From NCBI RefSeq assembly GCF_000143415.4, contig NW_003314383.1, positions 257,340 to 321,339 on the forward strand: 64,000 nucleotides of DNA. Direction: 5' to 3'. Of this stretch, positions 18,215 to 50,852 are shown one piece after another. Position numbers and translations under genes: made by a program. This DNA is from Selaginella moellendorffii (taxonomy: Eukaryota > Plantae > Lycopodiophyta). Position 1 is the stretch's first letter. The number at the start of each line of letters is the position of its first letter. Under the pieces are notes generated by a model. That model made no database searches. It was not told the DNA's origin and saw nothing but the letters and a program-made list of their open reading frames with translations.

Positions 18215-19099
18215 ATGGCTCACACTTTTCTCTTTGCTACTTCTCTCTTCGCTGTTCTTGCTAGTGCTGTTCTAGCTACCAACACCAACAACTCATGTTT
18301 CCCAGGTAAGACTCTGCAAGCGATTTTACAACCAGTCACAAGCTTTATGTTCGCAATCAAAACACAGGCGACGCCACCGTCCAAATGTATAACAGCGACC
18401 TCAAACTCATGAGAGATCTCGAAGTTGGAGACAAGGTATTGTATTGCTCTTAAGTTTTTCGAGAGCCCAGCTAAACGTGCCATGTCTAAAGATTGCAGTG
18501 AGCAAAAACGTGTTCTCCGATGTCTACGCATTCGGCCACAAGGACACCGATGTGATCTCCGAGTTCATCCAGGTCCACACCGCCTCAGACATGATCGAGC
18601 TTAGCGAGGGCCACTTCATCCCAGTCGACGCCAAGGGAAAGCTTGTGTACAAGCGAGCCAAGGATCTCCAGGTTGGAGAAACTCTCTGGGGATCATCTCA
18701 AATCACTGGTAACATCATACTTGTTTTGAGACTTTGCTCTTACTTTTGATAATTATAGAACTTTCCAAGGTGGAGAAGCTGGGTCTCTACAACCCATTCA
18801 CTCTCTCCGGCAACATCATGGTTAACAACGTGGAGGCTTCCTCTCACAGCGAGTGGTTCCTGGACTCCCTCTTTGATGCCATTGGCGCAACTGAGTACCT
18901 CCCATATGCATACCAGGCGGTGCTCGCTCCACTTCGTGCCATCTACAACATTGTTGGGAAGGAAATCTATGGAAAGGGTTATGCTGCCGTCAATTCTTGT
19001 GTCAACGTTGCTGAATTTGGAATGAAGCACGGAGGAAGCATTGCTCTCACCATTGGAATCGATGGAGTTGCAACAGCAATGCTGGCCACGAAGGCTTGA
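18215..19099 (+). CDS. Secreted Hint/Hog-domain (Hedgehog C-terminal-like) protein, copy A, 4 exons, apparently intact
   Basis: Same exon structure as copy C; spliced frame open; motifs SCFPGDATV, DLEVGDKI, FGHKD, LSEGH, GLYNPFTLSGNIMVNNVEASSHS, LAPLR. Confidence 0.88.
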
Positions 19100-23119: not shown

Positions 23120-23826
23120 CGGCGACCTCAAACTCATGAGAGATCTCGAAATTGGAGACAAGGTATTGTATTGCTCTTAAGTTTCTCGAAAGCCCATCTA
23201 AACGTGCCAGATCTATAGGTTGCAGTGAGCAAAAACGTGTTCTCGGATGTCTACGCATTCGGCCACAAGGACGCCGATGTGATCTCCGAGTTCATCCAGG
23301 TCCACACCACCTCAGACATGATCGAGCTTAGCGAGGGCCACTTCATCCCAGTCGACGCTAAGGGAAAGCTTGTGTACAAGAGAGCCAAGGATCTCTAGGT
23401 TGGAGAAACTCTCTGGGGATCATCTCAAATCACTAGTAACATCATACTTCCTTTGAGACTTTGCTCTTATTTTTGACAATTATAGAACTTTCCAAGGTGG
23501 AGAAGCTGGGTCTCTACAACCCATTCACTCTCTCCGGCAACATCATGGTTAACAACGTGGAGGCTCCCTCTCACAGCGAGTGGTTCCTGGACTCCCTCTT
23601 TGATGCCATTGGCGCAACTGAGTACCTCCCATATGCATACCACGCCATGCTCGCTCCACTTCGCGCCATCTACAACATCGTCGGCAAGGAAATCTATGGA
23701 AAGGGTTATGCTGCCGTCAATTCTTGTGTCAACGTTGCTGAATTTGGAATGAAGCACGGAGGAAGCATCGCTCTTGCTGGTGGAATCGCTGGAGTTGCAA
23801 CAGCAATGCTGGCCACGAAGGCTTGA
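23120..23826 (+). pseudogene. Hog gene copy B, pseudogene
   Basis: Exon 1 (signal peptide and catalytic Cys) deleted at junction atgcggcgacctc; CAG>TAG stop at 23396-23398. Confidence 0.9.
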
Positions 23827-23878
23827 TGAAAAACCAGAAGTAGAATAAAATGTAAATTTCATTAACATATTTTATGCT

Positions 23879-31500: not shown

Positions 31501-32299
31501 GCGCTATTTCGGCATACCGGTGGCCTAACGTGAGGATATGGGTACTCCACCAACTAGCATGGAATGGAACTTGGGCTTAGACCCAAGCCAGACACAGAAC
31601 AAGGACAGGCACGCAAGCGGGAGCTAGACTATGCCTCAAGTTGGTCAGCCATGCCCGACCTACCCACTATCCCTACTATACATTTGGAACCCCCCACAGC
31701 CCCCCCCCCCCCCCCCCCCCTTGAGGAACACATGCTTTGGGCTTTCACCCCAAGCCTCCCTTAGTATCAGGAGTTAGTCTCTGGGACAAGCTCGAAACTT
31801 ACTAAATATGGAATGTTCTTAGATTGTGAATTTGGACACGGGACGAACACCATTGTGTTCAGGCCGATCTCTACATTCCGTAGATGTGCCAAATGAGCAA
31901 ATCTGGACACTTTCCATAAATAGCATTTGGGACCGAAATGAGACTAACACAAAGGGCATGATAGCGAGGGTGTTTGGCAGACACAGTAAGCTATCATGTA
32001 GCGATATTGAGGGACCAATCTCAATACGCGAGGGTTCTTGTCAAGCCAGTGCAAGATAGAGCAAAAGAGAACTAAAAAGCCAAGCCAAGTATGCTTGGCT
32101 GAATAGACACTTAGGAATTCCGTCCTTATGCTCATCCGGCCAAGTACAGATGCAAAGTCTAGTTTACTAACACTTGAACAAGAGGGGCTGATAAAGGGTC
32201 CAGCAATACCGACCTCCTGCCATCGTGGCAGTAAGGTAAGAGTGTCTGTAAGGACTGGTCAACAGGTAACTTTCGATACCCGAAGTCACATGCGTGACA
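25538..32299 (-). mobile_element. Nested LTR retroelement (family 3), ~1.15-kb LTRs (25538-26331 gapped; 31144-32299), no intact ORF
   Basis: TG...CA termini, 5-bp TSD GCAAT (25533-25537, 32300-32304), iMet PBS complement ctctgatacca at ~31131, PPT complement ctctccccccc after 26331. Confidence 0.93.
25666..26139. other. Assembly gap (further gaps 28241-28348, 29273-29449)
   Basis: Runs of N; the duplicate copy at 52564-59663 is ungapped at these positions. Confidence 0.99.
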
Positions 32300-35200
32300 G
32301 CAATGATCCCTTTGAATGTCCGAACGAGCCGTTTCACCAGACTGTCTAATTGTGGATGATAAGCACTCGTGAAAGTGTGGCGTATCCCCAACCGAGATGT
32401 CAAAACATGAAATGCCTCAACCATAAATGTGGGACCATTATCCGAAAAAATCCGCTCTAGACAAGAATGCTAGAACACCACTCGATTGAGGAGGAAGTAT
32501 CCAACAGCAGCTGCAAAGGCACTAGCAAGAGCACCAACTTCCACCTAACAAGTCAAGTAGTCAGAAGCAATAATTACATATTCATTGCCAACAGTCGACT
32601 ATGGAAAAGGTCTCATAAGATCAAACGCCACCAACTCAAACGGACAGGAAACTACAATTGACTCTAACCATCCTTCCGCAACACGAGGGGGAGTATTATG
32701 AGCTTGGCACCAAATGCAACTATGCACATACCGGATAATATCACGTCGCATCTTTGGCCAATAGAAAGACTTGTGCAACTTCTTGATTACATGACGATGT
32801 CCCATATGCCCACCTAGAACAGAAGAATTATGGTAGGCATGGAGAAACCGCAGAATAAAGACAGAAGGCACCACTAGCCATAAATGATCATCAGGATCCA
32901 TCCCCATAAAATAAAGAAGGCCGTCGTCAAGGCGATATTGAGAATGTAAATGCTGGAAAGGCAAGTCATCAGCAAGTGATGCAGGATTCTCAAACCCATC
33001 TCGAAGCCTTCAAATCCACGGCTCAATCTTTTGAGCCTCACAAATCTCATCAAGAGAAGGTAGATCTTGCTCTATGCCTTGTGGACATTGAACGTCAAGT
33101 ATAGCAACCGCCGATAGCATAGAATCCTTGTCTAAAAAATCCATAGATGCATGAGCAACAGGCTCGTCAGAAACATGATAAGAGAGTGGAGAAGGAAGAG
33201 GAGCTCGAAAAAGGGCATCAGCATCAACCATAGAACTCCTTGGGCAATGAATAACATTAAAATTATATATCTGAAGCTTCAAAGCCCATCGAGCAATACG
33301 ACCAATCAGGTTCTTCTACTTCAATAATGAAGTAATAGTAGCATGGTCACTTTCAAGTAATGTCCGAGAACCATGTAAATATACATGAAGTTTCTCGAAA
33401 CCCCAGACTGTCGCTAAACACTCCTTTTCTGTCATGGAGTAGTTTATCTCTGCTAGTTGTAATGTATGGTTTATATACGCAATGGGATGGCGCTGACCAA
33501 GCACACTCGAGCTCTCTTGCATCAACACACCTCCAACACCAATATCAAAAGCATCCACACGCAAAATAAAAGGTCGAGTGTAGTTAGGATATGCCAAAAC
33601 CGGAGGAGTCGTCAATAGCTTTTTGAGATCCACAAACGTCTGCTCACAATCCGAAAACCAGATGAAAGATGATAATAATGACTTCAGCAACCCTCGCAAC
33701 GGTGCAATGCGATCAGAAAAATGATCCACAAAACAACTGAGATACTACACCTTGCCTAAGAAGCACTGCACATCATTCACACACTTCAGAGTAGGGAACT
33801 TTAGAACAACCACAAGTTTGTTAGGATCAACTTGCAAACCCTCACGAGAAATATGGTACGCAAGATAAGTTGTGTCTTTGGACCCAAACATGCACTTCGA
33901 CCGCTTCAGCTTTAAACCAACGTCGCGAAACCAATCCAACACTTTACAAACATCACGAATATGCTCCTCCCACGTCTCTTCCGAGTGGATCAAAACATCA
34001 TCAATGAAGTCAATAATCACTTCTGGCATATCGCAAAGAACCTCGTCCATTATCCATTGGAAAGTTGCTGGAACATTGTTCAAACCAAATGGCATCACCA
34101 AGAACTCGTACAAACCAAATGGGGTACGAAAAGCAGTTTTAGGATTATCTTCTTTGGCCATCAGTACTTGCCAGTACTCAGAAGCAAGATCCAGCTTGGT
34201 GAACCAATGACTTTGCCCCAGACGATCCAAGAGATCAACAGTGTGAGGAAGAGGGTACACATTCAAGATCGTCACTTCGTTTAATGAACAATAGTCAATG
34301 TAGAAACGAATACTCCCATTAGGTTTTGTCACAAGATAAGGTTCACATGCCCATACCTCTGCTTCCATTACTTTTGTTCCTCCACTATTTCCTCTTATGT
34401 TTTCGTCTTGTTCTGTTCTTCCTTATTCTGATCCCTCCAATAATCTTTGTGTTGCAACGGTTGACCAGCTCATGAAAGAGTATTCTAATCTCTTTGAATT
34501 TGACCTATCCTCTAGGGCCAAAATTGCCACACGTCATCCGATTCCAACCGGGATGCTCGTCCAATCAAGGTTCCTATTCAAGGAGATCAAGATTTTACTT
34601 GCAAACGTAAAGGAGATGTTGGACAAGGGTGTTATTCGGAAGTTGCAAAGTCCTTGAAGTAGAGGGATGAAGAAGTATGGAAGTAAGAGGAATGGATAAA
34701 ATATAAGGAAGTATGAGACAAGGGGGAGAAGCCTCAAAGTTACACTTGGCATGATTGTGCTACAACTAATCCATACCAAGAATGAGATCAAAAGTTTGAC
34801 TCAACACCACCCCCAATGATTGCAATTCAAGCTCGAGATCGCCCATATGCACAACCAAGTCTGCCTCATCCCGTGAACATGCATGTGTACGGCTGTTGCC
34901 ATAAAGAATGAAAACTGGTTTTGCCGCACGACGCAAGTGTAGACGGTAACGTATGGCAACAGGTCGAGCAATAGAAGATAAACTCGAATCTATATCAACT
35001 AACACGGAGAGAATAATAGGAGACCTCTTGTTATAAAAATGAGCTTGGAAAGTAAACACTGGATGAACGGGTGTCGAATGAACCCCTTGATGATACTCCC
35101 AAAAGAAAGATGGAGGGGTCACTAACTTATTCGCGCAAGGTCCCTCAGTTACTCGCGCGACTCTTTATTTCCCAGATACATCTCAGTGTCCAAACCTTCC

Positions 35201-36529
35201 ATTACAATAGCACCAACGGGATGTTGCTGACGCCAAGGTCTTCATCTAGGAAATGGAGGTCGCCAATCCAGAAAACCTCGACAACACCAATAAGTATGAC
35301 TAATTTCATCATACGCCCAGCAACAAACATCACGGCCATGGCCACGTCCTCGCCCTTATCCTTGGACTCGAGCAGCAGGAACATCAAACTCCATTGGAAC
35401 AAGACTATCACCTATAGGAAGTGGAACTGAAGGACGTGCAGCAAGAAGTGGAAAAGGTGACGTCTCATAATGTTGTGCCAAACGAAGAGCATCGTCAAGG
35501 GTGGCGAGAGCAAGTGCATGCACAAGTCCGACAAGATCTTGACGAAGTGTTGGCCACAATATTCGTAGCTTGATCCGCTCTGACATACTTGGCTTTGCAT
35601 GAAGCAAAAGACTTCAAAAACGAACACTAAATTGCATCACCGACTCAAATGGCCCTTGGCAAAGACGATGCAATTGTTGGAAGGCATCATCACAGTCATC
35701 GGCATGTCCAAAGGTGCATTTGAAGATGTCCAAGAGAACACTCCAATCCTTACGAGTGGCTGCGCTTAAACAATTGTACCACTGCAATGTCGTCCCTTGG
35801 AGACACGTGGGAAACTCACGCAAACATTAAGCATCATCCCAAGAATGATATGTGGCAATCATCGTGAAGTGATCGAACCAATGGTACACATCATCCCCAG
35901 GATTCCCGCGAAAGAACTCCAGCCAAATGCGAGGATTGGCACCAAGAGCAGGAGGAGTTGTACCCTATGCTATGAACACCACCATTAACTGAGTTTGGTT
36001 GTTCAATTGCAAACACATAACATTAAGCAATTGTACCAACTGCTGCTCCAGAGTCAAAGGAGGAGATTGTTGATCAGCCATGAAGACGAATGAAAAAGAA
36101 AGAGCAAAAGAAGAGAAATGACAAAAAGCTAGAAAGAAATGGTAAATCTAGACAATGCAAAAAGCTAAATCTAAACCAAAAGAAAGAACAAAATAAAGGA
36201 GATGGAAAAAGCTAGATTTAGATAATGCAAAAACTAGATCTAAACCAAAATCCCAAATCCAAGCACTCCTTAGGGACAATCAAAGGTGCCCTTCAACTCC
36301 ACTAATGTGAGTGCTTAGAATATAGAAAGGAAATTTAAAAATATGCATATCAATTAGCCCAAAAGCCTAGTTTATATATAAGAGTGAGTGGTCCAGATTG
36401 AAACTAATCTGACGGCTACAAAAATCCCACTATGCTAATATTAGTATACAGTATCATAGCTGTACACTTGGCCCTCATAGTTTAATATAAAATAAAATAA
36501 ATATAGTATTATGAGGTATGGCTACAGAT

Positions 36530-37235
36530 CTAAGGCCCAAGTACATAGCTATGAATATGAAGTCTAAATGTATGGCTACAATACTTTATATTAATATTAT
36601 TTATATAATATAATATTTATTACGTGCTGGGATTTTGATAGCTATTAGATTGGTTTCAATCAAGACCACTCAATCTTATATATAAATTAAAGGTTTTAGG
36701 CTAATTAGATATATAAATTTCTATATTCCATACACTCATATTGACAAAGTTGAGGGGCAGTCTTGATTGTTTTTGAGGATATATTTTTATTTTAGATCTA
36801 GTTTTTGGTTTAGATAATTAATGTAGCTGTTTAATGTTATATGGTTGAAACTAAACAATTAACTTCAGTTGATGGTGACATTCATGGCAAATAGTGCAAA
36901 TTTTCTTACTTTTTTTACCCATCTTTATGTCTGGCCAAATGTTTTCTATAGAAATCCCAAGAATGATATTAATCACTTTAAAATGATTGCCAATTATCAT
37001 TCTTGAAATGATATTTAATGTTTGCAATGGTTTCCCATATGTCTCCAAGAAATATTGTTGTAGTGGTACAAGAGTTTAAGTGTGGAACCTCCTCCTAGAT
37101 GTCTTCAAGTATGCATTTCAAAATGCTGATAATTGTGATGATGTTTTCTAACAATTGCATCATTTTTGTCAAGGACCATCTAAGTTAATTATACAATATA
37201 ATATTTGAATCTAGAGCCTCTTACTTTATGTAGAG
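36530..37235 (+). mobile_element. Decayed family-2 5' LTR, PBS and gag fragment, inverted relative to the adjacent element
   Basis: Reverse-complement similarity to ~35650-36479; spurious ORF 36851-37048 mirrors 35797-35988. Confidence 0.75.
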
Positions 37236-37912
37236 CTTAAGTAAAGAAAAATTAGAAATGTTTTCAAAAGAAATATAAAAATGATTTGCTACACTCTTTA
37301 AATGTACCAATGCTTTGTTTGTTTAATAGTAGTGCTTATTTTTTATTAATCTAGTTGATTGATAGAATTTCTAAATACAAGATTAAATTTATTACACGTT
37401 AACCATTAAATGTTCTAGCATTAAATGTTAGAATATCCTAGAATATTCAAATATATTCTAAATATCTACTACCAAATTTAAATGGGGACAGAGTTCCTTC
37501 AAGATTTCCAAAGACAATTCTAGGTAACTTAATATTTAAAAGGCCAAGTGTAAATGGACATCTGTATTATCTCAATCAAACAAGTGATAACCAACTTTCC
37601 ATTATCCAAACAAACATCCATAAAACATTTATTAAAATCATGCAAATGGAACCTGCCCAAGGCCTACAACTGGACAGCCCATGTGCCTTCAGCCATTATC
37701 ACTTTATTGTTATAGATAGAATTATAATAAAAAAAGTGTAAAGAATAAATAGAAATTTCTATGTTGTACTTATTGAGTTTTTTCAAGTAATCTACATATA
37801 GGAGGAGCTTGAACTAAGACGTATCTCATTTTAATTTAATTCTTAATCTAGATTTATACTTATCATTATATTACCCTAAACCGTAAATATCCAAGAATAT
37901 TTAAGATATTGT

Positions 37913-39941
37913 TTAAGACCATATCACATTACCATTCAAATCTAACAATTTTGTGGAGATGTTTTTCATATCTCCAATAACTTTTGACAGTGCATAAGCA
38001 GCAAAGAAATATCTAACTTCTAACCAGTTTTCAGCTTCTGGACATATCACACTTAGATCATCACTGAAGTTGAACCCAATTTTTGCTATAAAATATCGAT
38101 TCCTAAACATAAATATTTAGATAATTAAATATAAAAATAAAAAACTCACAAAGTATGATGATGAAAAATTGCCAAATAATCATCCAATCCAGCCAACCTT
38201 GAATCTGTAGAAAAAATAAAAACTGTTTCTAAGAAAATATAAAAAGTTATCTACTGACCTGACTCAGAATACTTAAGGCTCATCCCAAGTGCTATACTTC
38301 TTATATGTTGAAGTTCAAATTCAGTAGTTTTAAGAATCCTAGCTGTTTGTAAAGCTTCCAGCACTTCCTAAAAAACATAAAAGAATAAAATTTATAAGAA
38401 AATTCAAATGATATAATATAATACCATGATAGGAATGTTGTACATTGATTTCCTACTTTGGATCAATGTAGACAGTTTAGTCCCAGGGTCCTTTTGTAAA
38501 TGCCGCTCTGAAAGTACAAAAACATTTTAGATTAAAAGCTAAAAATATTTGCTTGCCAAGAAAGATCCTAAACATCGCATGTGTTGCCCATCTCATCACG
38601 TCGTTAGCTAAGCAATTTGGATTTTCACAAAGCATCATTGTAAGGCCACCACACTTGGTTTTTGAGCACGGAATGTATTTTGCATTAGCAGCCAGCACAG
38701 CAGTGGAGAATAAACATTCTCCAGCCTTAGTCTGTGAAAGAACAGGAGTAAGCATCACAGAAACGATACTGATTTACCTGATATTCTGGCATGACAAGAA
38801 AAGTGATTTACCTTAGATTTTGGCTCGAGCAGCATTGTGTCCTGAGAATTGGTGACCTTGTCCAATGTACCCCCACGATCCTGTAAAAAAATGAAATGGA
38901 ATTAAACGTCACGAGTAATAAGGAAGAATGATTTACTTGCGACTTGAGCAACATCATCTCTGTTATTCCCTCTGAATGCATTATGTCACATACGGCCGCG
39001 TCCTTGGCCACCCTGCCCTGGACACCAAGCTTGTCCCAAAGACGATCGTCAAAGACTGCCTTGGCAGGGACAAGCTTGGTGCCAGCCACACACGGCAGCA
39101 CGTCGCGTAGAGCATCTTCAGCGAAAAAGAGGCCCATCTTTCTATTGATGCCAATACCGCGGAGATCCACCACGACGCACTTTCTGATCCCGATCGCGTC
39201 CACAGCGTCCAGCTCCTTGACAGGATCCTCTCCACGGTCATGAGACGCCTGGACGAACTTCCTGGCCGACAGTGTCATGGGCATGCCCCGGAAGTCGTCG
39301 TAGTTGACGACCCAGTCCAGAGAGCCATACTGCAATGCCTTGGTGGGAACCGCCAGAAGGATGTAGCCAGTGGAGACCCGATTCTGCCAGATGGATTCCT
39401 TATAGACGAGGACTTGTTTAGCATCAAGCTCTCCTAAAGTTCCATCGATCACGAATTCCGCCGGAGGACCCCGACACCGCAGGCCGAGCTCAAACGTGGA
39501 AATGCAGCCCACGGCTTCGATCCTCCTGATCTGGCATGGCTCCAGCGGCGTCATTGAAGGCTCCATTTCGTTGTCGTACAAGTAGGCTGGAATGCTCCAA
39601 GGCGCTCCCCAGTAAAGGGCATTTGCATGTGTACGACGCTGCTTGGGGCAGATGTTTCCATGAGCGTAGCTCAGGTGATCAAGCAACGTCGTGTCGGGGC
39701 AGCCGCATGCAGTCAACTGCCGGTTGTAGCAGATATCGCAGAAGAGGAACAAGGAGGTGGTGGTGTTATCATAGACGAGCTTGAGAGGAGGAGCAGGAGT
39801 ACGAGGCCGAGCTCGAACCCGAGCTTGAGTTTCCACGAGCGTGCCGCATCCGCGGGCAACTCCTGCACCCACAAGCTAAATGTTAGCTGCGCTCTTGCGC
39901 TCTTCTACTCACTCACGTCCAAAAAGCCGCCGCCAGAACAT
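37913..39941 (-). CDS. Uncharacterised 543-aa protein, 8 exons (partner gene copy C, the only intact copy)
   Basis: Exons 39941-39917, 39862-38937, 38880-38812, 38731-38557, 38507-38425, 38367-38259, 38204-38150 and 38102-37913 total 1632 nt in one open frame, MFWRRLFG...DLNGNVIWS*. Introns are 47-80 nt, six GT-AG and one GC-AG. Confidence 0.8.
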
Positions 39942-39964
39942 GCCGCCCAACCAGGAGCAAGAGT

Positions 39965-40022
39965 TTATCTGCGAGTGTGCTGGGCAGATCCACTTATCCG
40001 CGAGTGTGCTAGGCAGATCCAC
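39965..40022. promoter_or_regulatory. Two copies of a 29-bp direct repeat in the divergent intergenic region
   Basis: ttatc(t/c)gcgagtgtgct(g/a)ggcagatccac twice, kept in all five cassettes. Regulatory role is inferred from position only. Confidence 0.5.
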
Positions 40023-40309
40023 CGATAGCTACCACCCTAGACACTTTTAGGGCAAGGTTCTTAGAATATTCCTTGAAACTCCATCTATATAAAAAGTTAA
40101 TCTTTATAATGAACATTTAATTTCTTTAGTGATCAATGATGCGGCATCTCAAATATGTACTTAGAATTAAATAATTCTTGCTATCAAAGTTTTAGGATCA
40201 CCAACTTGATCCGTTAGCCTCGTGTCATAGGCACTCGTTTGTAGTATTTAACATCGGTTCTAGAGCTCCTTTTCCTATCTTTCTAGGCTTCCATAGTGTA
40301 GAGTTCTCT

Positions 40310-41183
40310 ATGGCTCACACTTTTCTCTTTGCTACTTCTCTCTTCGCTGTTCTTGCTAGCGCTGTTCTAGCTACCAACACCAACAACTCATGTTTCCCAG
40401 GTAAGACTCTGCAAGCGATTTTACAACCAGTCACAAGCTTTATGTTCGCAGGCGATGCCACCGTCCAAATGTATAACGGCGACCTCAAACTCATGAGAGA
40501 TCTCGAAGTTGGAGACAAGGTATTGTATTGCTCTTAAGTTTCTCGAAAGCCCATCTAAACGTGCCAGATCTAAAGGTTGCAGTGAGCAAAAACGTGTTCT
40601 CCGATGTCTACGCATTCGGCCACAAGGACGCCGATGTGATCTCCGAGTTCATCCAGGTCCACACCGCCTCAGACATGATCGAGCTTAGCGAGGGCCACTT
40701 CATCCCAGTCGACGCCAAGGGAAAGCTTGTGTACAAGCGAGCCAAGGATCTCCAGGTTGGAGAAACTCTCTGGGGATCATCTCAAATCACTGGTAACATC
40801 ATACTTCTTTTGAGACTTTGCTCTTACTTTTGACAATTATAGAACTTTCCAAGGTGGAGAAGCTGGGCCTCTACAACCCATTCACTCTCTCCGGCAACAT
40901 CATGGTTAACAACGTGGAGGCTTCCTCCCACAGCGAGTGGTTCCTGGACTCCCTCTTTGATGCCATTGGCGCAACTGAGTACCTCCCATATGCATACCAG
41001 GCCGTGCTCGCTCCACTTCGTGCCATCTACAACATTGTTGGGAAGGAAATCTATGGAAAGGGTTATGCTGCCGTCAATTCTTGTGTCAACGTTGCTGAAT
41101 TTGGAATGAAGCACGGAGGAAGCATTGCTCTCACCGTTGGAATCGCTGGAGTTGCAACAGCAATGCTGGCCACGAAGTCTTGA
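40310..41183 (+). CDS. Secreted Hint/Hog-domain (Hedgehog C-terminal-like) protein, copy C, 238 aa, 4 exons
   Basis: Exons 40310-40400, 40452-40519, 40576-40792 and 40843-41183 total 717 nt with GT-AG introns of 50-56 nt. Signal peptide, S27|C28FPGDATV...MRDLEVGDKV...FSDVYAFGHKD...IELSEGHFI...AKDLQVGE...GLYNPFTLSGNIMVNNVEASSHS, an SRR-like YQAVLAPLRAIY helix and a hydrophobic C-tail. Confidence 0.93.
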
Positions 41184-43080
41184 GCAAAAATCAGGAGTAA
41201 ATAAGAGAGAAATAATCACAATCCAGATCAAGTCAATGTAAATCTCCAGAACAAGAACAAAAGAAATGAGTGAAGAAACTGTGTGATGTCAAACAAAAGC
41301 TTCATTTCATGACATGCATCACAAAGATGCATAGATGTTTTCCAAGTTTTTCAAATGTATAAGAGGTTCTAAATGTATAATAAGGATAGTGGGTAAGTCG
41401 GGCATAGTTGACTAACCTAAGGTATAGTTTAGCTTTTGTTTGTGTTTTTGTCATTGTTTTGTGTCTGGATTGGGTCTAAGCTTAAATTTCATATTATGTT
41501 AGTTGGTGGAGTATTTATATCCTCGCATTAGACTACTAGTATGCTGAAATAGTATTAAATTTCATTTGGCTCCATTTTACATGTTAGTTCTAGCATTGGG
41601 ATGGTAAATGCTCTAATGTTATTTTAAGTTGCTTCACATTCCTATCCCTTCACTTTTTGTGCTGTACATTCAAGAATCCGTTCTATGCTTTAGTGCTATT
41701 ACCCTTTAACCTTATCTTAGGAGTTTGGCACTATTCCTTCATTCAATAGTCTAAGGCCCTGAAACTCAAGTTCTACACCATTGTCCTTGGGATACATGGC
41801 ATGTGATATATAGCACATGTGCTTCATGGTTATCATATGGTAAATCATCATAGGATAAAAAGGTAAAAATCATGTGATATAAATTTTTATATTCCATGCA
41901 CTCACATTGATGGAGTTGAAGAGTAGCTTTGATTGTCTTTGAGGAATGCTTAGATTTATATTTTTAATTTAGATCTAGTTTTTGGTTTAGATAATTAGTT
42001 TAGTTATTTGATGTTATGTGGTTGCAACTAAATAATTAATTTCAGTTGATGGTGACATTCATGGCAAATGGTGCAACTCTTCTTACTCTTTCTGCCCATC
42101 CTTATATCTGGTCAAATTTTTTCTGTAGAAATCCCAAAGATGATATTGATCATTGGTTCAATCACTTTACATTGATTGCCAATTATTATTTTTGAAATGA
42201 TATCTAATATTTACACAAGTTTTTCACATATCTCCAAGAGACATTGTTGTAGTGGTACAATGGTTTAAGTGTGGAACCTCCTCCCAAATGTCTTCAAGCA
42301 TGCATTTAGAAATGTTGATAATTGTGATGATGCCTTCTAACAATTGCATCATCTTTGTCAGGGACCGTTTAAGTCAGTTATGCAATTTAATGTTTGAATC
42401 TAAAGCCTCTTACTTCGTGTAGAGCTTAAGTAAATAAAAATCAGAAATATTTTCAAAAGAAATATAAAATGATTTGCTACACTTTAGATGTACCAATGCT
42501 TTGTTTGTTTAATAGTAGTGCTTATTATTTATTAATCTAATTGATCAATAGGAAGTTTATAATTTCTAAACACGAGATTAAATTTATTACACATTAACCA
42601 TTAAATGTTCTAGCATTAAATGGTAGAATATCCTAGAGTATTTAAATATATTCTAAATGTCTACTACCAATTCTAAATGGACAATCTATATTATCTCACT
42701 TAAGTAAGTGATAAACCAAATTTCCATTACCTAAACAAACATCCATAAATTTTTTATTGAAATCATGCAAATTGAACCTGCCTCAAGGCCTACAACTGGA
42801 CAACCTGTGTGCCTTGGGCCATTATCACTTTATTATTATAGATAGAATTGTAACAAAAAAAGTGTAAAGAATAAATAGAAATTTCTATGTTGTACATATT
42901 GATTTTTTTCAAGTCATCTACATATAGGAGGAGCTAGAACTAAGACATATCTCATTTTATAGCTATTAAATATTAAATTTAATGCTTAATCTAGATTTAT
43001 ACTTATCATTATATTCTAAAATATATTACCCTAAACCGTAAATATCAAATAATATTTAAGATATAACCCCTACTGATTGT

Positions 43081-45025
43081 TTAACACCATATCAATGTTT
43101 TTCATATCTTCAATACAGTGCATAAACAGCAAAGAAATATCTAACTTCCAACCAGTTTTCAGCTTCTGGACATATCACACTTAGATCATCACTGAAGTTG
43201 AACCCAATTTTTGCTATAAAATGTCCATATTCCTAAACATAAATATTTAGATACTTAAATATAAAAATAAAAAACTCACAAAGTATGATGATGAAAAATT
43301 GCCAAATAATCATCCAATCCAGCCAACCTTGAATCTGTAGAAAAAATAAAATAACCTGACTCAGAATACTTAAGGCTCATCCCAAGTGCTATACTTCTTA
43401 TATGTTGAAGTTCAAATTCAGTAGTTTTAAGAATCCTAGCTGTTTGTAAAGCTTCCAGCACTTCCTAAAAAACATAAAGAATAAAAGTAAAAAAATTTCA
43501 AATGATATAATATAATACCATGATAGGAATGTTGTACATTGATTTCCTACTTTGGACAGTTTAGTCCCAGGGTCCTTTTGTAAATGCCGCTCTGAAAGTA
43601 CAAAAACATTTTAGATTAAAAGCTAAAAATATTTGCTTGCCGAGAAAGATCCTAAACATCGCCTGTGTTGCCCATCTCATCACGTTGTTAGCTAAGCAAT
43701 TTGGATTTTCACAAAGCATCATTGTAAGGCCGCCACACTTGGTTTTTGAGCACGGAATGTATTTTGCGTTAGCAGCCAGCACAGCAGTGGAGAATAAACA
43801 TTCTCCAGCCTTAGTCTGTGAAAGAACAGGAGTAAGCATCACAGAAACGATACTGATTTACCTGATATTCTGGCATGACAAGAAAAGTGATTTACCTTAG
43901 ATTTTGGCTCGAGCAGCATTGTGTCCTGAGAATTGGTGACCTTGTCCAATCTACCCCCACAATCCTGTACAAAAATGAAATGGAATTAAACGTCACGTGT
44001 AATAAGGAAGAATGATTTACTTGCGACTTGAGCAACATCATCTCTGTTATTCCCTCTGAATGCATTATGTCACATACGGCCGCGTCCTTGGCCACCCTGC
44101 CCTGGACACCAAGCTTGTCCCAAAGACGATCGTCAAAGACTGCCTTGGCAGGGACAAGCTTGGTGCCAGCCACACACGGCAGCACGTCGCGTAGAGCATC
44201 TTCAGCGAAAAAGAGGCCCATCTTTCTATTGATGCCAATACCGCGGAGATCCACCACGACGCACTTTCTGATCCCGATCGCGTCCACAGCGTCCAGCTCC
44301 TTGACAGGATCCTCTCCACGGTCATGAGACGCCTGGACGAACTTCCTGGCCGACAGTGTCATGGGCATGCCCCGGAAGTCGTCGTAGTTGACGACCCAGT
44401 CCAGAGAGCCATACTGCAATGCCTTGGTGGGAACCGCCAGAAGGATGTAGCCAGTGGAGACCCGATTCTGCCAGATGGATTCCTTATAGACAAGGACTTG
44501 TTTAGCATCAAGCTCTCCTAAAGTTCCATCGATCACGAATTCCGCCGGAGGACCCCGACACCGCAGGCCGAGCTCGAACGTGGAAATGCAGCCCACGGCT
44601 TCGATGCTCCTGATCTGGCATGGCTCCAGCGGCGTCATTGAAGGCTCCATTTCGTTGTCGTACAAGTAGGCTGGAATGCTCCAAGGCGCTCCCCAGTAAA
44701 GGGCATTTGCATGTGTACGACGCTGCTTGGGGCAGATGTTTCCATGAGCGTAGCTCAGGTGATCAAGCAACGTCGTGTCGGGGCAGCCGCATGCAGTCAA
44801 CTGCCGGTTGTAGCAGATATCGCAGAAGAGGAACAAGGAGGTGGTGGTGTTATCATAGACGAGCTTGAGAGGAGGAGCAGGAGCACGAGGCCGAGCTCGA
44901 ACCCGAGCTCGAGTTTCCGCGAGCGTGCCACATCCGCGGGCAACTCCTGTGCCCACAAGCTAAATGTTAGCTGCGCTCTTGCGCTCTTCTACTCACTCAC
45001 CTCCAAAAAGCCGCCGCCAGAACAT
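43081..45025 (-). pseudogene. Partner gene copy D, 3' half disrupted
   Basis: Exons 1-4 open; 10-nt deletion in exon 5 (~43555), 21-nt collapsed intron, indels in the last exon. Confidence 0.75.
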
Positions 45026-45409
45026 GCCGCCCAACCAGGAGCAAGAGTTTATCTGCGAGTGTGCTGGGCAGATCCACTTATCCGCGAGTGTGCTAGGCAG
45101 ATCCACCGATAGCTATAGACACTTTTAGGGCAAGGTTCTTAGAATATTCCTTGAAACTCCATTTTGCTTTCATTCTTTTAATGCTATATAAAAAGTTAAT
45201 CTTTATAATGAACATTTAATTTCTTTAGTGAGTCGATGATGCGGCATCTCAAATATGTACTTAGAATTAAATAATTCTTTCTATCAAAGTTTTAGGATCA
45301 CCAACTTGATCCGTTAGCCTCATGTCATAGGCACTCGTTTGTAGTATTTAACATCGGTTCTAGAGCTCCTTTTCCTATCTTTCTAGGCTTCCATAGTGTA
45401 GAGTTCTCT

Positions 45410-46294
45410 ATGGCTCACACTTTTCTCTTTGCTACTTCTCTCTTCGCTGTTCTTGCTAGCGCTGTTCTAGCTACCAACACCAACAACTCATGTTTCCCAG
45501 GTAAGACTCTGCAAGCGATTTTACAACCAGTCACAAGCTTTATGTTTGCAATCAAAACACAGGCGACGCCACCGTCCAAATGTATAACGGCGACCTCAAA
45601 CTCATGAGAGATCTCGAAGTTGGAGACAAGGTATTGTATTGCTCTTAAGTTTTTCGAGAGCCCAGCTAAACGTGCCAGGTCTAAAGATTGCAGTGAGCAA
45701 AAACGTGTTCTCCGATGTCTACGCATTCGGCCACAAGGACACCGATGTGATCTCCGAGTTCATCCAGGTCCACACCGCCTCAGACATGATCGAGCTTAGC
45801 GAGGGCCACTTCATCCCAGTCGACGCCAAGGGAAAGCTTGTGTACAAGCGAGCCAAGGATCTCCAGGTTGGAGAAACTCTCTGGGGATCATCTCAAATCA
45901 CTGGTAACATCATACTTGTTTTGAGACTTTGCTCTTACTTTTGATAATTATAGAACTTTCCAAGGTGGAGAAGCTGGATCTCTACAACCCATTCACTCTC
46001 TCCGGCAACATCATGGTTAACAACGTGGAGGCTTCCTCTCACAGCGAGTGGTTCCTGGACTCCCTCTTTGATGCCATTGGCGCAACTGAGTACCTCCCAT
46101 ATGCATACCAGGCCGTGCTCGCTCCACTTCGTGCCATCTACAACATTGTCGGGAAGGAAATCTATGGAAAGGGTTATGCTGCCGTCAATTCTTGTGTCAA
46201 CGTTGCTGAATTTGGAATGAAGCACGGAGGAAGCATTGCTCTCACCATTGGAATCAATGGAGTTGCAACAGCAATGCTGGCCACGAAGGCTTGA
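45410..46294 (+). CDS. Secreted Hint/Hog-domain protein, copy D, apparently intact
   Basis: Near-identical to copy A, sharing the 11-nt intron-1 insertion and KDTD; carries G>D in the GLYNP motif. Confidence 0.85.
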
Positions 46295-47961
46295 GCAAAA
46301 ATCAGGAGTAAATAAGAGAGAAATAATCACAATCCAGATCAGGTCAATGTAAATCTCCAGAACAAGAATGAAAGAAATGAGTGAAGAAACTGTGTGATGT
46401 CAAACAAAAGCTTCATTTCATGACATGCATCACAAAGATGCATAAATGTTAAGTTTCTCAATTGTATAGGGGGTTTTAAATGTATAGTAAAGATAGTCGG
46501 GCATAGTTGACCAACCTAAGGTATAATTTCTTTTGTTTGTGTTTTTGTCATTGTTTTGTGTTTGGATTGGGTGTAAGCTTAAATTCTATACCATGTTAGT
46601 TGGTGGAGTATTTATATCCTCACGTTAGACTACTAATATGTTGAAATAATATGAAATTTCATTTGGTTCTGTTTTGCGTGTTAATTTTAGCATTGGGATG
46701 GTAAATGCTCTAATGTTGTTCTAAGTTACTTCACATTCCTATCCCTTCACTTTTTGGGCTGTACATTCAAGAGCCCATTCTGTGCTCTTGTGCCATTACC
46801 CTTTAACCCTATCTTAGGAGTTTGGCACTATTCCTTCATTCAATGGCTTAAGGCCCTGAAACTCAAGTTTTGCACCATTGTCCTTAGGACACATGGCATG
46901 TGATATATGGCATATGTGCTTCATGGTTATCATATGGTAAATCATCATAGGATAAAAGGTAAAAATCATGTGATATAAATTTTTATATTCGATGCACTCA
47001 TATTGACGGAGTTGAAGAGTAGCCTTGATTGTCTTTGAGGAATGCTTAGATTTATGTTTTTAATTTAGATCAAGTTTTTGGTTTAGATAATTAGTTTAGT
47101 TATTTGATGTTATGTGGTTGCAACTAAATAATTAATTTCAGTTGATGGTGATATTCATGGCAAATGGTGCAACTCTTCTAACTCTTTCTACCCATCCTTA
47201 TATCTGGTAAAATGTTTTTTGTAGAAATCCCAAAGATGATAATGATCATTGGTTCAATCACTTTACATTGATTGCCAATTATTATTTTTGAAATGATATC
47301 TAATATTTACACAAGTTTTTCACATATCTCCAAAAGACATTGTTGTAGTGGTACAATGGTTTAAGTGTGGAACCTCCTCCCAAATGTCTTCAAGCATGCA
47401 TTTAGAAATATTGATAATTGTGATGATGCCTTCTAACAATTGCATCATCTTTGTTAGGGACCATCTAAGTCAGTTATGCAATTTAATGTTTGAATCTAAA
47501 GCCTCTTACTTTGTGTAGAGTTTAAGTAAACAAAAATCAGAATTTTCAAAAGAAATATAAAATGATTTGCTACACTTTAGATGTACCAATGCTTTGTTTG
47601 TTTAATAGTAGTGCTTATTATTTATTAATCTAATTGATTGATAGGAAGTTTATAATTTCTAAACACGAGATTAAATTTATTACACATTAACCATTAAATG
47701 TTCTAGCATTAAATGGTAGAATATCCTAGAATATTTAAATATATTCTAAATATCTACTACCAAATCTAAATGGACAATCTATATTATCTCACTTAAGTAA
47801 GTGATAAACTAACTTTCCATTACCTAAACAAACATCCATAAATTTTTTATTGAAATCATGCAATCTTAATTGAAATCTTAATCTAGATTTATACTTATCA
47901 TTATATTCTAAAATATATTACCCTAAACCCTAATTATCCAAGAATAACCCCTACTGATTGT

Positions 47962-49949
47962 TTAACACCATATCACATTACCATTCAAACCTAACAATTT
48001 TGTGGAGATGTTTTCCATATCTTCAATACAGTGCATAAACAGCAAAGAAATATCTAACTTCCAACCAGTTTTCAGCTTCTGGACATATCACACTTACATC
48101 ATCACTGAAGTTGAACCCAATTTTTGCTATAAAATGTCCATATTCCTAAACATAAATATTTAGATACTTAAATATAAAAATAAAAAACTCACAAAGTATG
48201 ATGATGAAAAATTGCCAAATAATCATCCAATCCAGCCAACCTTGAATCTGTAGAAAAAATAAAATAACCTGACTCAGAATACTTAAGGCTCATCCCAAGT
48301 GCTATACGTCTTATATGTTGAAGTTCAAATTCAGTAGTTTTAAGAATCCTAGCAGTTTGTAAAGCTTCCAGCACTTCCTAAAAAACATAAAGAATAAAAT
48401 TTATAAGAAATTTCAAATGATATAATATAATACCATGATAGGAATGTTGTACATTGATTTCCTACTTTGGATCAACGTAGACAGTTTAGTCCCAGGGTCC
48501 TTTTGTAAATGCCGCTCTTAAAGTACAAAAACATTTTAGATTAAAAGCTAAAAATATTTGCTTGCCGAGAATGATCCTAAACATCGCCTGTGTTGCCCAT
48601 CTCATCACGTTGTTAGCTAAGCAATTTGGATTTTCACAAAGCATCGTTGTAAGGCCGCCACACTTGGTTTTTGAGCACGGAATGTATTTTGCATTAGCAG
48701 CCAGCACAGCAGTGGAGAATAAACATTCACCAACCTTAGTCTGTGAAAGAACAGTAGTAAGCATCACAGAAACGATACTGATTTACCTGATATTCTGGCA
48801 TGACAAGAAAAGTGATTTACCTTAGATTTTGGCTCGAGCAGCATTGTGTCCTGAGAATTGGTGACCTTGTCCAATGTACCCCCACAATCCTGTAAAAAAA
48901 TGAAATGGAATTAATCTTCACGAGTAATAAGGAAGAATGATTTACTTGCGACTTGAGCAACATCATCTCTGTTATTCCCTCTGAATGCATTATGTCACAT
49001 ACGGCCGCGTCCTTGGCCACCCTGCCCTGGACACCAAGCTTGTCCCAAAGACGATCGTCAAAGACTGCCTTGGCAGGGACAAGCTTGGTGCCAGCCACAC
49101 ACGCCAGCACGTCGTATAGAGCATCTTCGGCGAAAAAGAGGCCCATCTTTCTATTGATGCCAATACCGCGGAGATCCACCACGACGCACTTTCTGATCCC
49201 GATCGCGTCCACAGCGTTCAGCTCCTTGACAGGATCCTCTCCACGGTCATGAGACGCCTGGACGAACTTCCTGGCCGACAGTGTCATGGGCATGCCCCGG
49301 AAGTCGTCGTAGTTGACGACCCAGTCCAGAGAGCCATACTGCAATGCCTTGGTGGGAACCGCCAGAAGGATGTAGCCAGTGGAGACCCGATTCTGCCAGA
49401 TGGATTCCTTATAGACGAGGACTTGTTTAGCATCAAGCTCTCCTAAAGTTCCATCGATCACGAATTCCGCCGGAGGACCCGACACCGCAGGCCGAGCTCA
49501 AACGTGGAAATGCAGCCCACGGCTTCGATGCTCCTGATCTGGCATGGCTCCAGCGGCGTCATTGAAGGCTCCATTTCGTTGTCGTACAAGTAGGCTGGAA
49601 TGCTCCAAGGCGCTCCCCAGTAAAGGGCATTTGCATGTGTACGACGCTGCTTGGGGCAGATGTTTCCATGAGCGTAGCTCAGGTGATCAAGCAACGTCGT
49701 GTCGGGGCAGCCGCATGCAGTCAACTGCCGGTTGTAGCAGATATCGCAGAAGAGGAACAAGGAGGTGGTGGTGTTATCATAGACGAGCTTGAGAGGAGGA
49801 GCAGGAGCACGAGGCCGAGCTCGAACCCGAGCTCGAGTTTCCGCGAGCGTGCCACATCCGCGGGCAACTCCTGTGCCCACAAGCTAAATGTTAGCTGCGC
49901 TCTTGCGCTCTTCTACTCACTCACCTCCAAAAAGCCGCCGCCAGAACAT
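47962..49949 (-). pseudogene. Partner gene copy E, frameshifted
   Basis: 1-nt deletion in exon 2 (~49478; ORF split into 49458-49880 and 48817-49485), 21-nt collapsed intron, last-exon indels. Confidence 0.8.
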
Positions 49950-50145
49950 GCCGCCCAACCAGGAGCAAGAGTTTATCTGCGAGTGTGCTGGGCAGATCCA
50001 CTTATCCGCGAGTGTGCTAGGCAGATCCACCGATAGCTATAGACACTTTTAGGGCAAGGTTCTTAGAATATTCCTTGAAACTCCATAACTCGTTTTATTT
50101 TGCTTTCATTCTTTATATAAAAAGTTAATCTTTATAATGAACATG

Positions 50146-50852
50146 CGGCGACCTCAAACTCATGAGAGATCTCGAAATTGGAGACAAGGTATTGTATTGC
50201 TCTTAAGTTTCTCGAAAGCCCATCTAAACGTGCCAGATCTATAGGTTGCAGTGAGCAAAAACGTGTTCTCGGATGTCTACGCATTCGGCCACAAGGACGC
50301 CGATGTGATCTCCGAGTTCATCCAGGTCCACACCACCTCAGACATGATCGAGCTTAGCGAGGGCCACTTCATCCCAGTCGACGCTAAGGGAAAGCTTGTG
50401 TACAAGAGAGCCAAGGATCTCTAGGTTGGAGAAACTCTCTGGGGATCATCTCAAATCACTAGTAACATCATACTTCCTTTGAGACTTTGCTCTTATTTTT
50501 GACAATTATAGAACTTTCCAAGGTGGAGAAGCTGGGTCTCTACAACCCATTCACTCTCTCCGGCAACATCATGGTTAACAACGTGGAGGCTCCCTCTCAC
50601 AGCGAGTGGTTCCTGGACTCCCTCTTTGATGCCATTGGCGCAACTGAGTACCTCCCATATGCATACCACGCCATGCTCGCTCCACTTCGCGCCATCTACA
50701 ACATCGTCGGCAAGGAAATCTATGGAAAGGGTTATGCTGCCGTCAATTCTTGTGTCAACGTTGCTGAATTTGGAATGAAGCACGGAGGAAGCATCGCTCT
50801 TGCTGGTGGAATCGCTGGAGTTGCAACAGCAATGCTGGCCACGAAGGCTTGA
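50146..50852 (+). pseudogene. Hog gene copy E, pseudogene
   Basis: Same exon-1 deletion and TAG (50422-50424) as copy B. Confidence 0.9.

What the first reader, a model, noticed from the sequence alone, without database searches (positions are those of the whole stretch)
40310..41183. Plant Hedgehog-type autoprocessing protein whose whole cargo is a ~6-residue peptide
Seen: the spliced gene is signal peptide (MAHTFLFATSLFAVLASAVLA), then TNTNNS, then a Hint domain starting at CFPG, an SRR-like helix (LAPLR) and a hydrophobic tail. Established: Hog domains cleave before this Cys through a thioester and, in Hedgehog, transfer the N-terminal part to cholesterol. Hog genes are known outside animals, including algae and, as I recall, Selaginella, so the domain alone is not new. 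Inference: the product would be a tiny secreted peptide (TNTNNS, or VLATNTNNS if cleaved after A18), possibly sterol-linked and carrying an N-N-S glycosylation sequon. Alternatively the peptide is only a handle for tagging some small nucleophile. TNTNNS is identical in all three intact copies.
Basis: partly seen in the sequence, partly recalled or inferred. Interest (0 to 1): 0.88.

Follow-up and report, generated by a model that had tools for sequence, protein, structure and literature searches.

The report
Spikemoss Hedgehog-type gene, near-empty cargo
This is a real, already annotated spikemoss (Selaginella moellendorffii) gene, transcribed at least at subfamily level, for a Hedgehog-type self-cleaving domain that carries only about six residues to cleave off; that stub is the most variable part of the protein, so it is unlikely to be a specific peptide signal.

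Summary
Exons 40310-40400, 40452-40519, 40576-40792 and 40843-41183 (+) encode a 238-aa protein: signal peptide, TNTNNS, Hint module from Cys28, helical SRR-like region, C-terminal hydrophobic helix. It is identical to GenBank EFJ07236.1 / RefSeq XP_002991665.1 ("warthog protein 6", S. moellendorffii). Pfam Hint scores 83 bits, and the AlphaFold model (pLDDT 87.6) best matches Drosophila Hedgehog-C.

Transcript contigs from four studies remove all three introns and show no upstream exon. They cannot be assigned to this copy alone. Core catalytic residues are kept. The general base is His69, which is invariant in 59 relatives. The equivalent D303H change in fly Hedgehog retains activity.

The family was published in 2008, and that paper's supplement holds a TNTS sister. 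Nematode "Short-hog" and "Hog only" genes are precedents. This scan has already reported sister genes on other DNA (s1-433172, s1-432168).

New here:
- The Hog domain is under purifying selection (dN/dS 0.18, dS 0.82).
- The stub changes freely between paralogues and syntenic copies: TNTNNS, TNNNNS, TNTNTS, TNTS, TNTTG, TNNQNNTG.

That argues against a specific peptide ligand. It fits a generic polar leaving group or head group. Cleavage and sterol transfer remain untested.

The parts
40310..41183 (+). Hog gene copy C: four exons (40310-40400, 40452-40519, 40576-40792, 40843-41183, stop included), 238 aa. It equals EFJ07236.1 / XP_002991665.1.
   Evidence: Splice model. Identity to P0151. Accessions. 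Intron-skipping contigs.
40310..40372 (+). Signal peptide, residues 1-21. Predicted cleavage is after V-L-A, before Thr22.
   Evidence: N-terminal hydrophobic segment. The (-3,-1) rule was applied by eye. The boundary xVxA|T/Q is shared with paralogues P0153, P0003 and P0157. No SignalP was run.
40373..40390 (+). Cargo stub TNTNNS (residues 22-27), encoded by an ACC/AAC-rich low-complexity stretch. It holds an N-N-S sequon.
   Evidence: Read directly from the sequence. Variants in paralogues are listed.
40391..40937 (+). Hint module, residues 28-157, spliced across introns 1-3. Catalytic Cys28 is the codon at 40391-40393, His69 at 40621-40623, and Ser91 and His94 at 40687-40698.
   Evidence: Pfam Hint 83.1 bits. 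Residue-by-residue alignment to Drosophila Hh-C17. Invariant columns C28, H69 and H94. Foldseek best match 6tyy/1at0.
40947..41111 (+). Helical SRR-like region, residues 161-215. It includes the WFLD and LPxAYQxxLxPxR (LAPLR) motifs.
   Evidence: The AlphaFold model has helices 161-215 at pLDDT about 94. Family consensus. Burglin's alignment places the sister's APLRA with Hh APLRL.
41121..41177 (+). C-terminal hydrophobic helix, residues 219-237, followed by Ser238. It is a probable membrane anchor, with a Lys at -2 or -3 in the relatives read.
   Evidence: Hydropathy peak at 218-236. Model helix 219-237. Tails of relatives.
18215..19099 (+). Intact paralogue A (TNTNNS). It has Asp inside the hydrophobic tail. 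It equals EFJ07234.1.
45410..46294 (+). Intact paralogue D (TNTNNS). It has Gly to Asp in the conserved GLYNP motif and Asn inside the tail. It equals XP_024521179.1.
23121..23826 (+). Pseudogene B. Exon 1 and most of exon 2 are missing, and there is an in-frame TAG in exon 3.
50147..50852 (+). Pseudogene E. It has the same lesions as B and lies in the 27-kb tandem duplicate.
38422..39872 (-). Head-to-head neighbour gene of unknown function. It is spliced, expressed and co-duplicated with the Hog gene.
   Evidence: A contig with CT..AC joints. ORF. No Pfam family. The Atlas score is only 0.80.

Best explanation
This gene is a transcribed member of the lycophyte/bryophyte Hog family: a Hedgehog-type Hint module, an SRR-like helical region and a C-terminal membrane helix. 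Its passenger has shrunk to a 4-8 residue, hypervariable stub rich in Asn, Thr and Ser.

Shown: the gene model and its splicing, the Hint fold, conservation of the catalytic residues, purifying selection on the Hog domain, and free variation of the stub.

Inferred mechanism: the protein enters the ER and its signal peptide is removed before Thr22. It stays tethered by the C-terminal helix. Cys28 attacks the Ser27 carbonyl in an N-to-S acyl shift, helped by Ser91 and His94. His69 takes the place of the animal general base Asp46 (D303). It activates the hydroxyl of a membrane lipid, most likely a phytosterol, which resolves the thioester.

The products would be a small polar peptide ester, possibly N-glycosylated and carrying a lipid, and a membrane-bound Hog domain starting at Cys28. 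The stub acts as a generic polar head group or leaving group. It does not act as a sequence-specific ligand.
For: - Gene model, identity and annotation.
- Splicing: intron-less contigs come from four studies, and intergenic depth is zero, so the runs behave as RNA.
- Hint domain: Pfam 83.1 bits.
- Catalytic residues, from alignment to Drosophila Hh-C: Cys28=C1, His69=D46, Ser91/His94=T69/H72. C28, H69 and H94 are invariant in 59 relatives.
- Fold: AlphaFold pLDDT 87.6. The best structural match is 6tyy, the D46H Hedgehog mutant (E 1.6e-11, TM 0.82), followed by 1at0.
- His as general base: D303H keeps structure and activity and widens sterol tolerance in fly HhC (review PMC9163320).
- Selection: dN/dS is 0.18 overall and 0.12 in the Hint part, at dS 0.82, against the TNTTG paralogue.
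- Stub variation: P0173 (TNNNNS) and P0176 (TNTS) have identical Hog domains. Copy C is 99% identical to the TNTNTS genes. In the syntenic pair P0153/P0179, 4 of the 6 differences lie in the stub.
- Hydrophobic segments: only two, the signal peptide and the C-terminal tail.
Against: - No biochemical data exist for any plant Hog in the papers I could search. Cleavage itself is therefore inferred.
- The Cys143 equivalent is Ser154. Cys143 forms an intermediate in animal Hedgehog autoprocessing according to a 2025 paper's title, so the plant chemistry may differ.
- The nucleophile is unknown. Water, or a non-sterol lipid, is equally compatible with the sequence.
- Contigs cannot be assigned to this copy alone. 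Four paralogues share residues 28-125 with it, and the long contigs carry another paralogue's exon 4.
- Copies A and D carry suspicious substitutions.
- If the released Hog domain is degraded as in animals, a generic stub leaves the gene's purpose unexplained.
Confidence: 0.6

Rival explanations
1. The membrane-tethered Hog domain is itself the functional product, for example a sterol-binding or sterol-consuming protein, or one activated by exposing an N-terminal Cys. The stub is then only a short pro-peptide removed by hydrolysis, and no lipid-peptide conjugate matters.
For: - The stub is hypervariable while the Hog domain, helical region and tail are conserved.
- The C-terminal anchor is present in the moss, clubmoss and spikemoss relatives read, a feature animal HhC lacks.
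- C. elegans hog-1, 'Hog only', is a precedent for a Hog kept without a passenger domain.
Against: - Retention of Cys28, His69 and His94 in every intact short-stub paralogue shows that the cleavage chemistry is needed, not only binding.
- No function of a free Hog domain turned up in the papers searched.
Confidence: 0.25
2. TNTNNS (or VLATNTNNS) is a specific secreted signalling peptide, sterol-linked and N-glycosylated, recognised by a receptor.
For: - The stub is identical in the three intact window copies.
- An N-x-S/T sequon is present in all six stub variants.
- The subfamily is transcribed.
Against: - The three window copies are very young (dS 0.02-0.03), so their identity carries no weight.
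- Length and sequence change between genes with identical Hog domains and between syntenic copies.
- Sequon retention is what permutation of the same residues gives: 0.45-0.8 per variant, joint 0.08, and the variants are not independent.
Confidence: 0.07
3. The short-stub genes are decaying remnants of cargo-bearing Hog genes, amplified by tandem duplication and without function.
For: - Two of the five window copies are pseudogenes.
- Copies A and D have a charged or polar residue in the tail, and D has a changed GLYNP motif.
- dN/dS among the window copies is 0.3-0.5, based on very few changes.
Against: - dN/dS is 0.18 at dS 0.82 between two short-stub lineages.
- Catalytic residues are intact.
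- Transcript contigs appear in four studies.
- At least ten annotated intact short-stub genes lie on three scaffolds.
Confidence: 0.08

Closest known systems
Plant Hog proteins of Burglin 2008 (pSm Hog, pSl Hog, pPp Hog; PMC2362128)
   Same: Same family and same species. The paper's pSm Hog, seen in its supplementary alignments, reads ...VLATN--TS CFPGDATVQMYNGDL..., which is a TNTS sister of this gene. Both have the motif J cysteine replaced by Ser and the APLR motif K.
   Different: The paper treats the moss and spikemoss sequences as sharing a conserved upstream region and does not remark on the near-empty cargo. Its pSm row includes translated 5' UTR (FHSVEFS before the Met), which matches window 40289-40309.
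Nematode 'Short-hog' (Xiphinema Shog1, Shog2), T. spiralis Xhog3 and C. elegans/C. briggsae hog-1 ('Hog only')
   Same: These are Hog domains with a very short predicted passenger: 15, 25 and 34 residues after the signal peptide. hog-1 has about 10 residues and no signal peptide.
   Different: They come from a different kingdom. Here the stub is 4-8 residues, there is a signal peptide, a C-terminal membrane helix and a His general base. The nematode genes have no reported function either.
Animal Hedgehog C-terminal autoprocessing domain (Drosophila Hh-C17, PDB 1AT0; D46H mutant 6TYY)
   Same: The Hint fold (Foldseek TM 0.82). Cys1, the T/SxxH motif and the APLR-type motif after the Hint module.
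   Different: The general base is His, not Asp. Cys143 is Ser. There is no Hedge signalling domain. A C-terminal membrane helix has been added. Sequence identity is about 24%.
Sister S. moellendorffii Hog subfamilies with real cargos (Pro-rich P0003/P0154/P0155; four-Cys peptide P0157/P0004)
   Same: The same exon-level build, signal peptide, CFPGDA start, helical region and tail. Identity in the Hog part is 53-76%.
   Different: They carry 30-70 residue passengers, either AGP/extensin-like or Cys-rich. Whether the short stub arose by loss, or the long cargos by gain, is unresolved.

Membership tests
Hint module (Pfam PF01079) / Hog domain | Significant profile match over the Hint module | tested here: met
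   83.1 bits against a cut-off of 29.7, E 2.7e-23, residues 24-157. The exon pieces alone score 17.2 and 26.1 bits.
Hint module (Pfam PF01079) / Hog domain | Nucleophilic Cys (or Ser) as the first residue of the module | tested here: met
   Cys28 aligns to Cys1 of Hh-C17. It is invariant in 59 relatives.
Hint module (Pfam PF01079) / Hog domain | Block B TxxH motif (Thr69, His72) | tested here: met
   Ser91-x-x-His94 aligns to T-P-A-H. His94 is invariant, and Thr is the family majority, replaced by Ser here.
Hint module (Pfam PF01079) / Hog domain | Hint beta fold | tested here: met
   AlphaFold pLDDT above 95 over residues 28-157. Foldseek 6tyy E 1.6e-11 and 1at0 E 1.3e-10, followed by inteins and BIL domains.
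Hedgehog-type cholesterolysis domain (HhC) | General base Asp46 (D303) that activates the sterol hydroxyl | tested here: not met
   The position is His69, invariant in the plant family. The D303H swap is reported to be active in fly HhC (PMC9163320), so the function may be kept by a different residue.
Hedgehog-type cholesterolysis domain (HhC) | Conserved Cys143 | tested here: not met
   Ser154 aligns to Cys143. Burglin 2008 noted the same for moss and red-algal Hogs.
Hedgehog-type cholesterolysis domain (HhC) | Sterol-recognition region after the Hint module | tested here: inconclusive
   A confident helical region at 161-215 with an APLR motif is present. No solved SRR structure was matched, and sterol binding cannot be tested.
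Hedgehog-type cholesterolysis domain (HhC) | Autocleavage with transfer of the passenger to a sterol | not testable with these tools
   This needs biochemistry. No plant Hog assay was found in the literature searches.
Hedgehog (Hh) signalling protein | N-terminal Hedge signalling domain | tested here: not met
   Only six residues lie between the signal peptide and Cys28. There is no other Pfam family, and no upstream exon appears in the contigs.
Intein | C-terminal splice junction (His-Asn plus a downstream nucleophile) and a C-extein | tested here: not met
   The Hint module is followed by the WFLD helical region and a membrane tail, not by an extein. The best sequence and fold matches are Hedgehog-C, and inteins score far lower.

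The most novel reading that the evidence does not exclude
Spikemosses use single-turnover, membrane-tethered Hog enzymes to make a class of small steryl-(glyco)peptide lipids. Each would have a 4-8 residue Asn/Thr/Ser head group esterified to a phytosterol. This would be protein-templated lipid synthesis and the first sterylation outside animals. The Pro-rich and Cys-rich sisters would be sterol-anchored glycoproteins and peptides made by the same chemistry.
Probability: 0.2. Interest if true: 0.85.

Novelty: new variant of a known kind. Interest (0 to 1): 0.5.

Why it matters
Covalent sterol modification of proteins is described in the papers retrieved as unique to animal Hedgehog (PMC7242414, PMC3303847). 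What the widespread non-animal Hog domains do has been open since 2008.

A Hog subfamily with a passenger of four to eight residues makes that question easy to test. The predicted product is small enough for direct LC-MS, and the precursor is small enough for simple in vitro assays.

The natural His general base matches an engineered fly variant with broadened sterol tolerance. That suits an organism whose membranes hold mixed phytosterols.

The hypervariable stub narrows the hypotheses. The conserved and selected part is the enzyme and its membrane anchor, not the peptide.

Tried and rejected
1. Upstream exon. The ATG frame stays open for 117 nt upstream, and a pyrimidine-rich AG lies at 40285-40286. 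However, contigs from two studies start at 40295/40296 with no joint. The TNTTG paralogue has an in-frame stop 27 nt upstream with unrelated sequence. All paralogues start with 'MA' plus a hydrophobic signal. I rejected it, although contigs cannot prove a transcript start.

2. Copy-specific expression. Contigs over exons 2-3 have 0 mismatches to copy C. Four paralogues outside the window share those residues, and the long contigs continue into another paralogue's exon 4 and 3' UTR (33 differences, loose end at 41358). Expression is therefore shown only for the subfamily. Depth figures were not used to rank expression.

3. Conserved N-glycosylation sequon. It is present in all six stub variants but is not beyond what composition predicts.

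4. Direction of cargo evolution. A 16-row tree put TNTTG with the Pro-rich clade (86/86), which suggested that the short stub is ancestral. A 21-row tree collapsed this to a polytomy, and the AU test does not reject a single short-stub clade (p 0.066). This is left open.

5. GPI signal instead of a transmembrane helix. It is possible by spacing, with the omega site near Asn-Val-Ala. But that segment sits in confidently modelled, conserved helices, and the tails end with Lys/Arg-containing stubs. I judged it less likely, and no GPI predictor was run.

6. Neighbour gene as a functional partner. It has no Pfam family, and the Atlas hits score only 0.80, the level shuffled proteins reach a third of the time. 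No complex prediction was run, because adjacency alone gave no reason for one.

7. Short-cargo Hogs outside Selaginella. Among 82 hits that cover the Hint N-terminus, the only non-Selaginella ones below 50 residues lack an N-terminal signal peptide and may be incomplete models.

8. Zhao et al. 2019 (PMC7106946) is not held, so the D303H facts come from the review PMC9163320.

Full report
**What is there.** I read window 39900-41600 and built the gene from canonical GT..AG introns. The exons are 40310-40400, 40452-40519, 40576-40792 and 40843-41183 on the + strand, with introns of 51, 56 and 50 nt and a 238-residue product. An acceptor at 40582 for intron 2 breaks the frame. The acceptor at 40575 restores it.

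The product has five parts:
- a 21-residue hydrophobic N-terminus;
- TNTNNS;
- a module starting with Cys28-Phe-Pro-Gly;
- a region with WFLD and LAPLR motifs;
- a C-terminal hydrophobic stretch.

The spliced protein is identical to database protein P0151. P0151 is GenBank EFJ07236.1 (SELMODRAFT_429979), RefSeq XP_002991665.1 "warthog protein 6" and UniProt D8T7Y3 "Hint domain-containing protein". It comes from Selaginella moellendorffii scaffold GL377687.1, positions 297649-298522. The gene is therefore already annotated.

**Transcription and gene ends.** Public contigs from four separate studies were laid on 37600-41800. All three introns are skipped at exactly the predicted GT..AG borders. 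Depth is zero in the intergenic stretches on both sides, so these runs behave as RNA.

Two contigs from different studies begin at 40295 and 40296, 14-15 nt before the ATG, with no joint to anything upstream. The ATG frame is open for 117 nt upstream. However, the TNTTG paralogue has an in-frame stop 27 nt upstream with unrelated sequence, and every paralogue starts with Met-Ala followed by a hydrophobic signal. I conclude that no upstream exon adds a domain, with the reservation that contigs cannot prove a start site.

Contigs match copy C without a mismatch over exons 2-3. Four paralogues outside the window have the same residues there, and the long contigs run on into another paralogue's exon 4 and 3' UTR. 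Expression is therefore shown for the subfamily, not for this copy alone.

**Copies in the window.** tblastn and a DNA alignment find five copies.
- Intact: A at 18215-19099, C at 40310-41183 and D at 45410-46294. All three carry TNTNNS.
- Pseudogenes: B near 23121-23826 and E near 50147-50852. Both lack exon 1 and most of exon 2 and carry an in-frame TAG.

The pattern reflects units of about 5 kb inside a 27-kb tandem duplication that is about 98.4% identical. Copy A has Asp and copy D has Asn inside the hydrophobic tail. D also changes the conserved GLYNP motif. Copy C looks the cleanest. Among A, C and D, dS is only 0.02-0.03, so their identical TNTNNS says nothing about constraint.

**What the protein is.**
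- Sequence: the full protein hits Pfam Hint (PF01079) at 83.1 bits (cut-off 29.7) over residues 24-157. Against solved structures, the only convincing matches are Hedgehog proteins.
- Catalytic residues: the printed alignment to Drosophila Hh-C17 puts Cys28 on Cys1, His69 on Asp46 (D303, the general base), Ser91 and His94 on Thr69 and His72, and Ser154 on Cys143.
- Conservation: in an alignment of 59 relatives, Cys28, Phe29, His69, His94, Gly134, Gly143 and Asp161 are invariant.
- Fold: an AlphaFold model built on that alignment has mean pLDDT 87.6 and pTM 0.81. It shows a beta-rich Hint core (28-157, pLDDT above 95), helices at 161-215 (about 94) and a terminal helix at 219-237. Foldseek ranks 6tyy first (Hedgehog autoprocessing mutant D46H, E 1.6e-11, TM 0.82) and 1at0 second, ahead of BIL domains and inteins.
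- Hydropathy: only two hydrophobic segments exist, the signal peptide and the tail.
- General base: a review of Hedgehog autoprocessing reports that the D303H swap keeps structure and activity in fly HhC and widens the range of accepted sterols (PMC9163320). The plant family has that His naturally.

**Relatives.** A search of 1.84 billion representative proteins with exon 4 gave 451 hits. Named relatives include the clubmoss Diphasiastrum, the moss Ceratodon and the green alga Gonium. They share the FGH(K/N)D, GLYNP, SxHSxWFLD and LPxxYQxxLxPxR motifs. The moss, clubmoss and spikemoss relatives I read also share the hydrophobic tail.

Among 82 hits that cover the start of the Hint module, the catalytic Cys sits at positions from about 21 to about 877. 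All convincing cases below position 35 are from S. moellendorffii.

Within this species, sister subfamilies carry a 30-70 residue Pro-rich module or a four-Cys peptide in place of the stub.

**How the stub evolves.** Annotated short-stub paralogues carry TNTNNS, TNNNNS, TNTNTS, TNTS, TNTTG and TNNQNNTG.
- P0173 (TNNNNS) and P0176 (TNTS) have identical Hog domains.
- Copy C is 99% identical to the TNTNTS genes.
- P0153 (TNTTG, scaffold GL377679.1) and P0179 (TNNQNNTG, scaffold GL377687.1) sit between the same ABC-transporter and ADH_N neighbours. Their loci are 95% identical in DNA and their proteins 98% identical. Four of the six differences, a three-residue indel and one substitution, fall in the stub.

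By contrast, copy C against P0153 gives dN/dS 0.18 overall and 0.12 in the Hint part, at dS 0.82. The enzyme is under purifying selection, while the stub is a low-complexity ACC/AAC stretch that changes freely. All six variants contain an N-x-S/T sequon, but shuffling the same residues gives one 45-80% of the time. This is no evidence of a conserved glycan site.

**Loss or gain of cargo.** A 16-row tree grouped TNTTG with the Pro-rich genes (86/86), which hinted that the short stub is ancestral. A 21-row tree left the four subfamilies unresolved, and the AU test does not reject one short-stub clade (p 0.066). I leave the direction open.

**Mechanism.**
- Shown: a spliced, transcribed gene family; a Hint fold; intact core residues; selection on the Hog part; a variable stub.
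- Inferred from Hedgehog chemistry: signal-peptide removal before Thr22, where the xVxA|T/Q boundary is shared by the paralogues; tethering by the C-terminal helix; an N-to-S acyl shift at Ser27-Cys28; and resolution of the thioester by a hydroxyl activated by His69, most plausibly that of a membrane phytosterol.

The products would be a small polar peptide ester and a membrane-bound Hog domain. Retention of Cys28, His69 and His94 in all intact short-stub genes indicates that the cleavage chemistry matters. The variable stub argues that its exact sequence does not.

The main rival is that the tethered Hog domain is the functional product and the stub is only a leaving group. A specific TNTNNS hormone and pure decay are both unlikely on these data.

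**What is known.** Burglin (2008, PMC2362128) reported Hog genes in S. moellendorffii, S. lepidophylla and Physcomitrella, and noted the Ser in motif J. The paper's supplementary alignments show its pSm Hog as a TNTS sister of this gene, preceded by translated 5' UTR that matches window 40289-40309. The paper does not comment on the missing cargo.

It does describe nematode "Short-hog" genes with 15- and 25-residue passengers, Ts Xhog3 with 34, and C. elegans hog-1 as "Hog only". I found no functional study of a plant Hog.

Earlier notes of this scan reached the same reading for sister genes on other DNA (s1-433172, s1-432168). I examined one of those sisters, the TNTTG gene, myself.

**Verdict.** The gene and family are known, and short-passenger Hogs have precedents.

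The points not remarked on in the literature I could search:
- the extreme stub, 4-8 residues behind a signal peptide;
- its hypervariability against a selected enzyme;
- the natural His general base;
- the conserved membrane anchor.

I class this as a new variant of a known kind and of moderate interest, mainly because it offers a simple test of whether sterylation exists outside animals.

Noticed in passing
window 38422-39872 (-): A spliced, expressed gene lies head-to-head with the Hog gene, about 440 bp between the start codons. It is co-duplicated in each 5-kb unit. GenBank annotates a 512-aa product with no Pfam family. The Atlas feature search gives only 0.80-level helicase-C hits, which is chance level.
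   Followed up: partly
window 17696-25665 against 44903-52691, and 26140-36637 against 53516-64000: A tandem segmental duplication of about 27 kb at about 98.4% identity carries two Hog copies per unit. It is interrupted by three runs of N at 25666-26139, 28241-28348 and 29273-29449.
   Followed up: partly
window 18215-23826 and 45410-50852: GenBank and RefSeq hold gene models that join exons 1-3 of an intact copy to exon 4 of the pseudogene about 5 kb downstream. Examples are XP_024521180.1 'isoform X2', and EFJ07237.1, which spans 5.4 kb. A 211-aa 'isoform X2' skips part of exon 3. These may be read-through transcripts or annotation artefacts.
   Followed up: no
L001 3001-3882 (GL377679.1) against L003 3001-3893 (GL377687.1): The TNTTG and TNNQNNTG genes sit between the same PDR-type ABC transporter and ADH_N genes on two scaffolds, at 95% DNA identity. 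The two scaffolds may be haplotypes or an old segmental duplicate of one region.
   Followed up: partly
P0161 / P0169 (SELMODRAFT_429995 and SELMODRAFT_429394): These are annotated Hog models in which the signal peptide runs straight into CFPG with no stub at all. Their C-terminus is replaced after the Hint module, so they are probably degenerate copies or mis-models.
   Followed up: no
P0187 against P0157 (four-Cys cargo subfamily): One paralogue has ...CQNNTG before the catalytic Cys where its sister has ...CQNPG. An Asn-x-Thr-Gly junction like that of the short-stub genes has therefore arisen next to the cleavage site in another subfamily.
   Followed up: no
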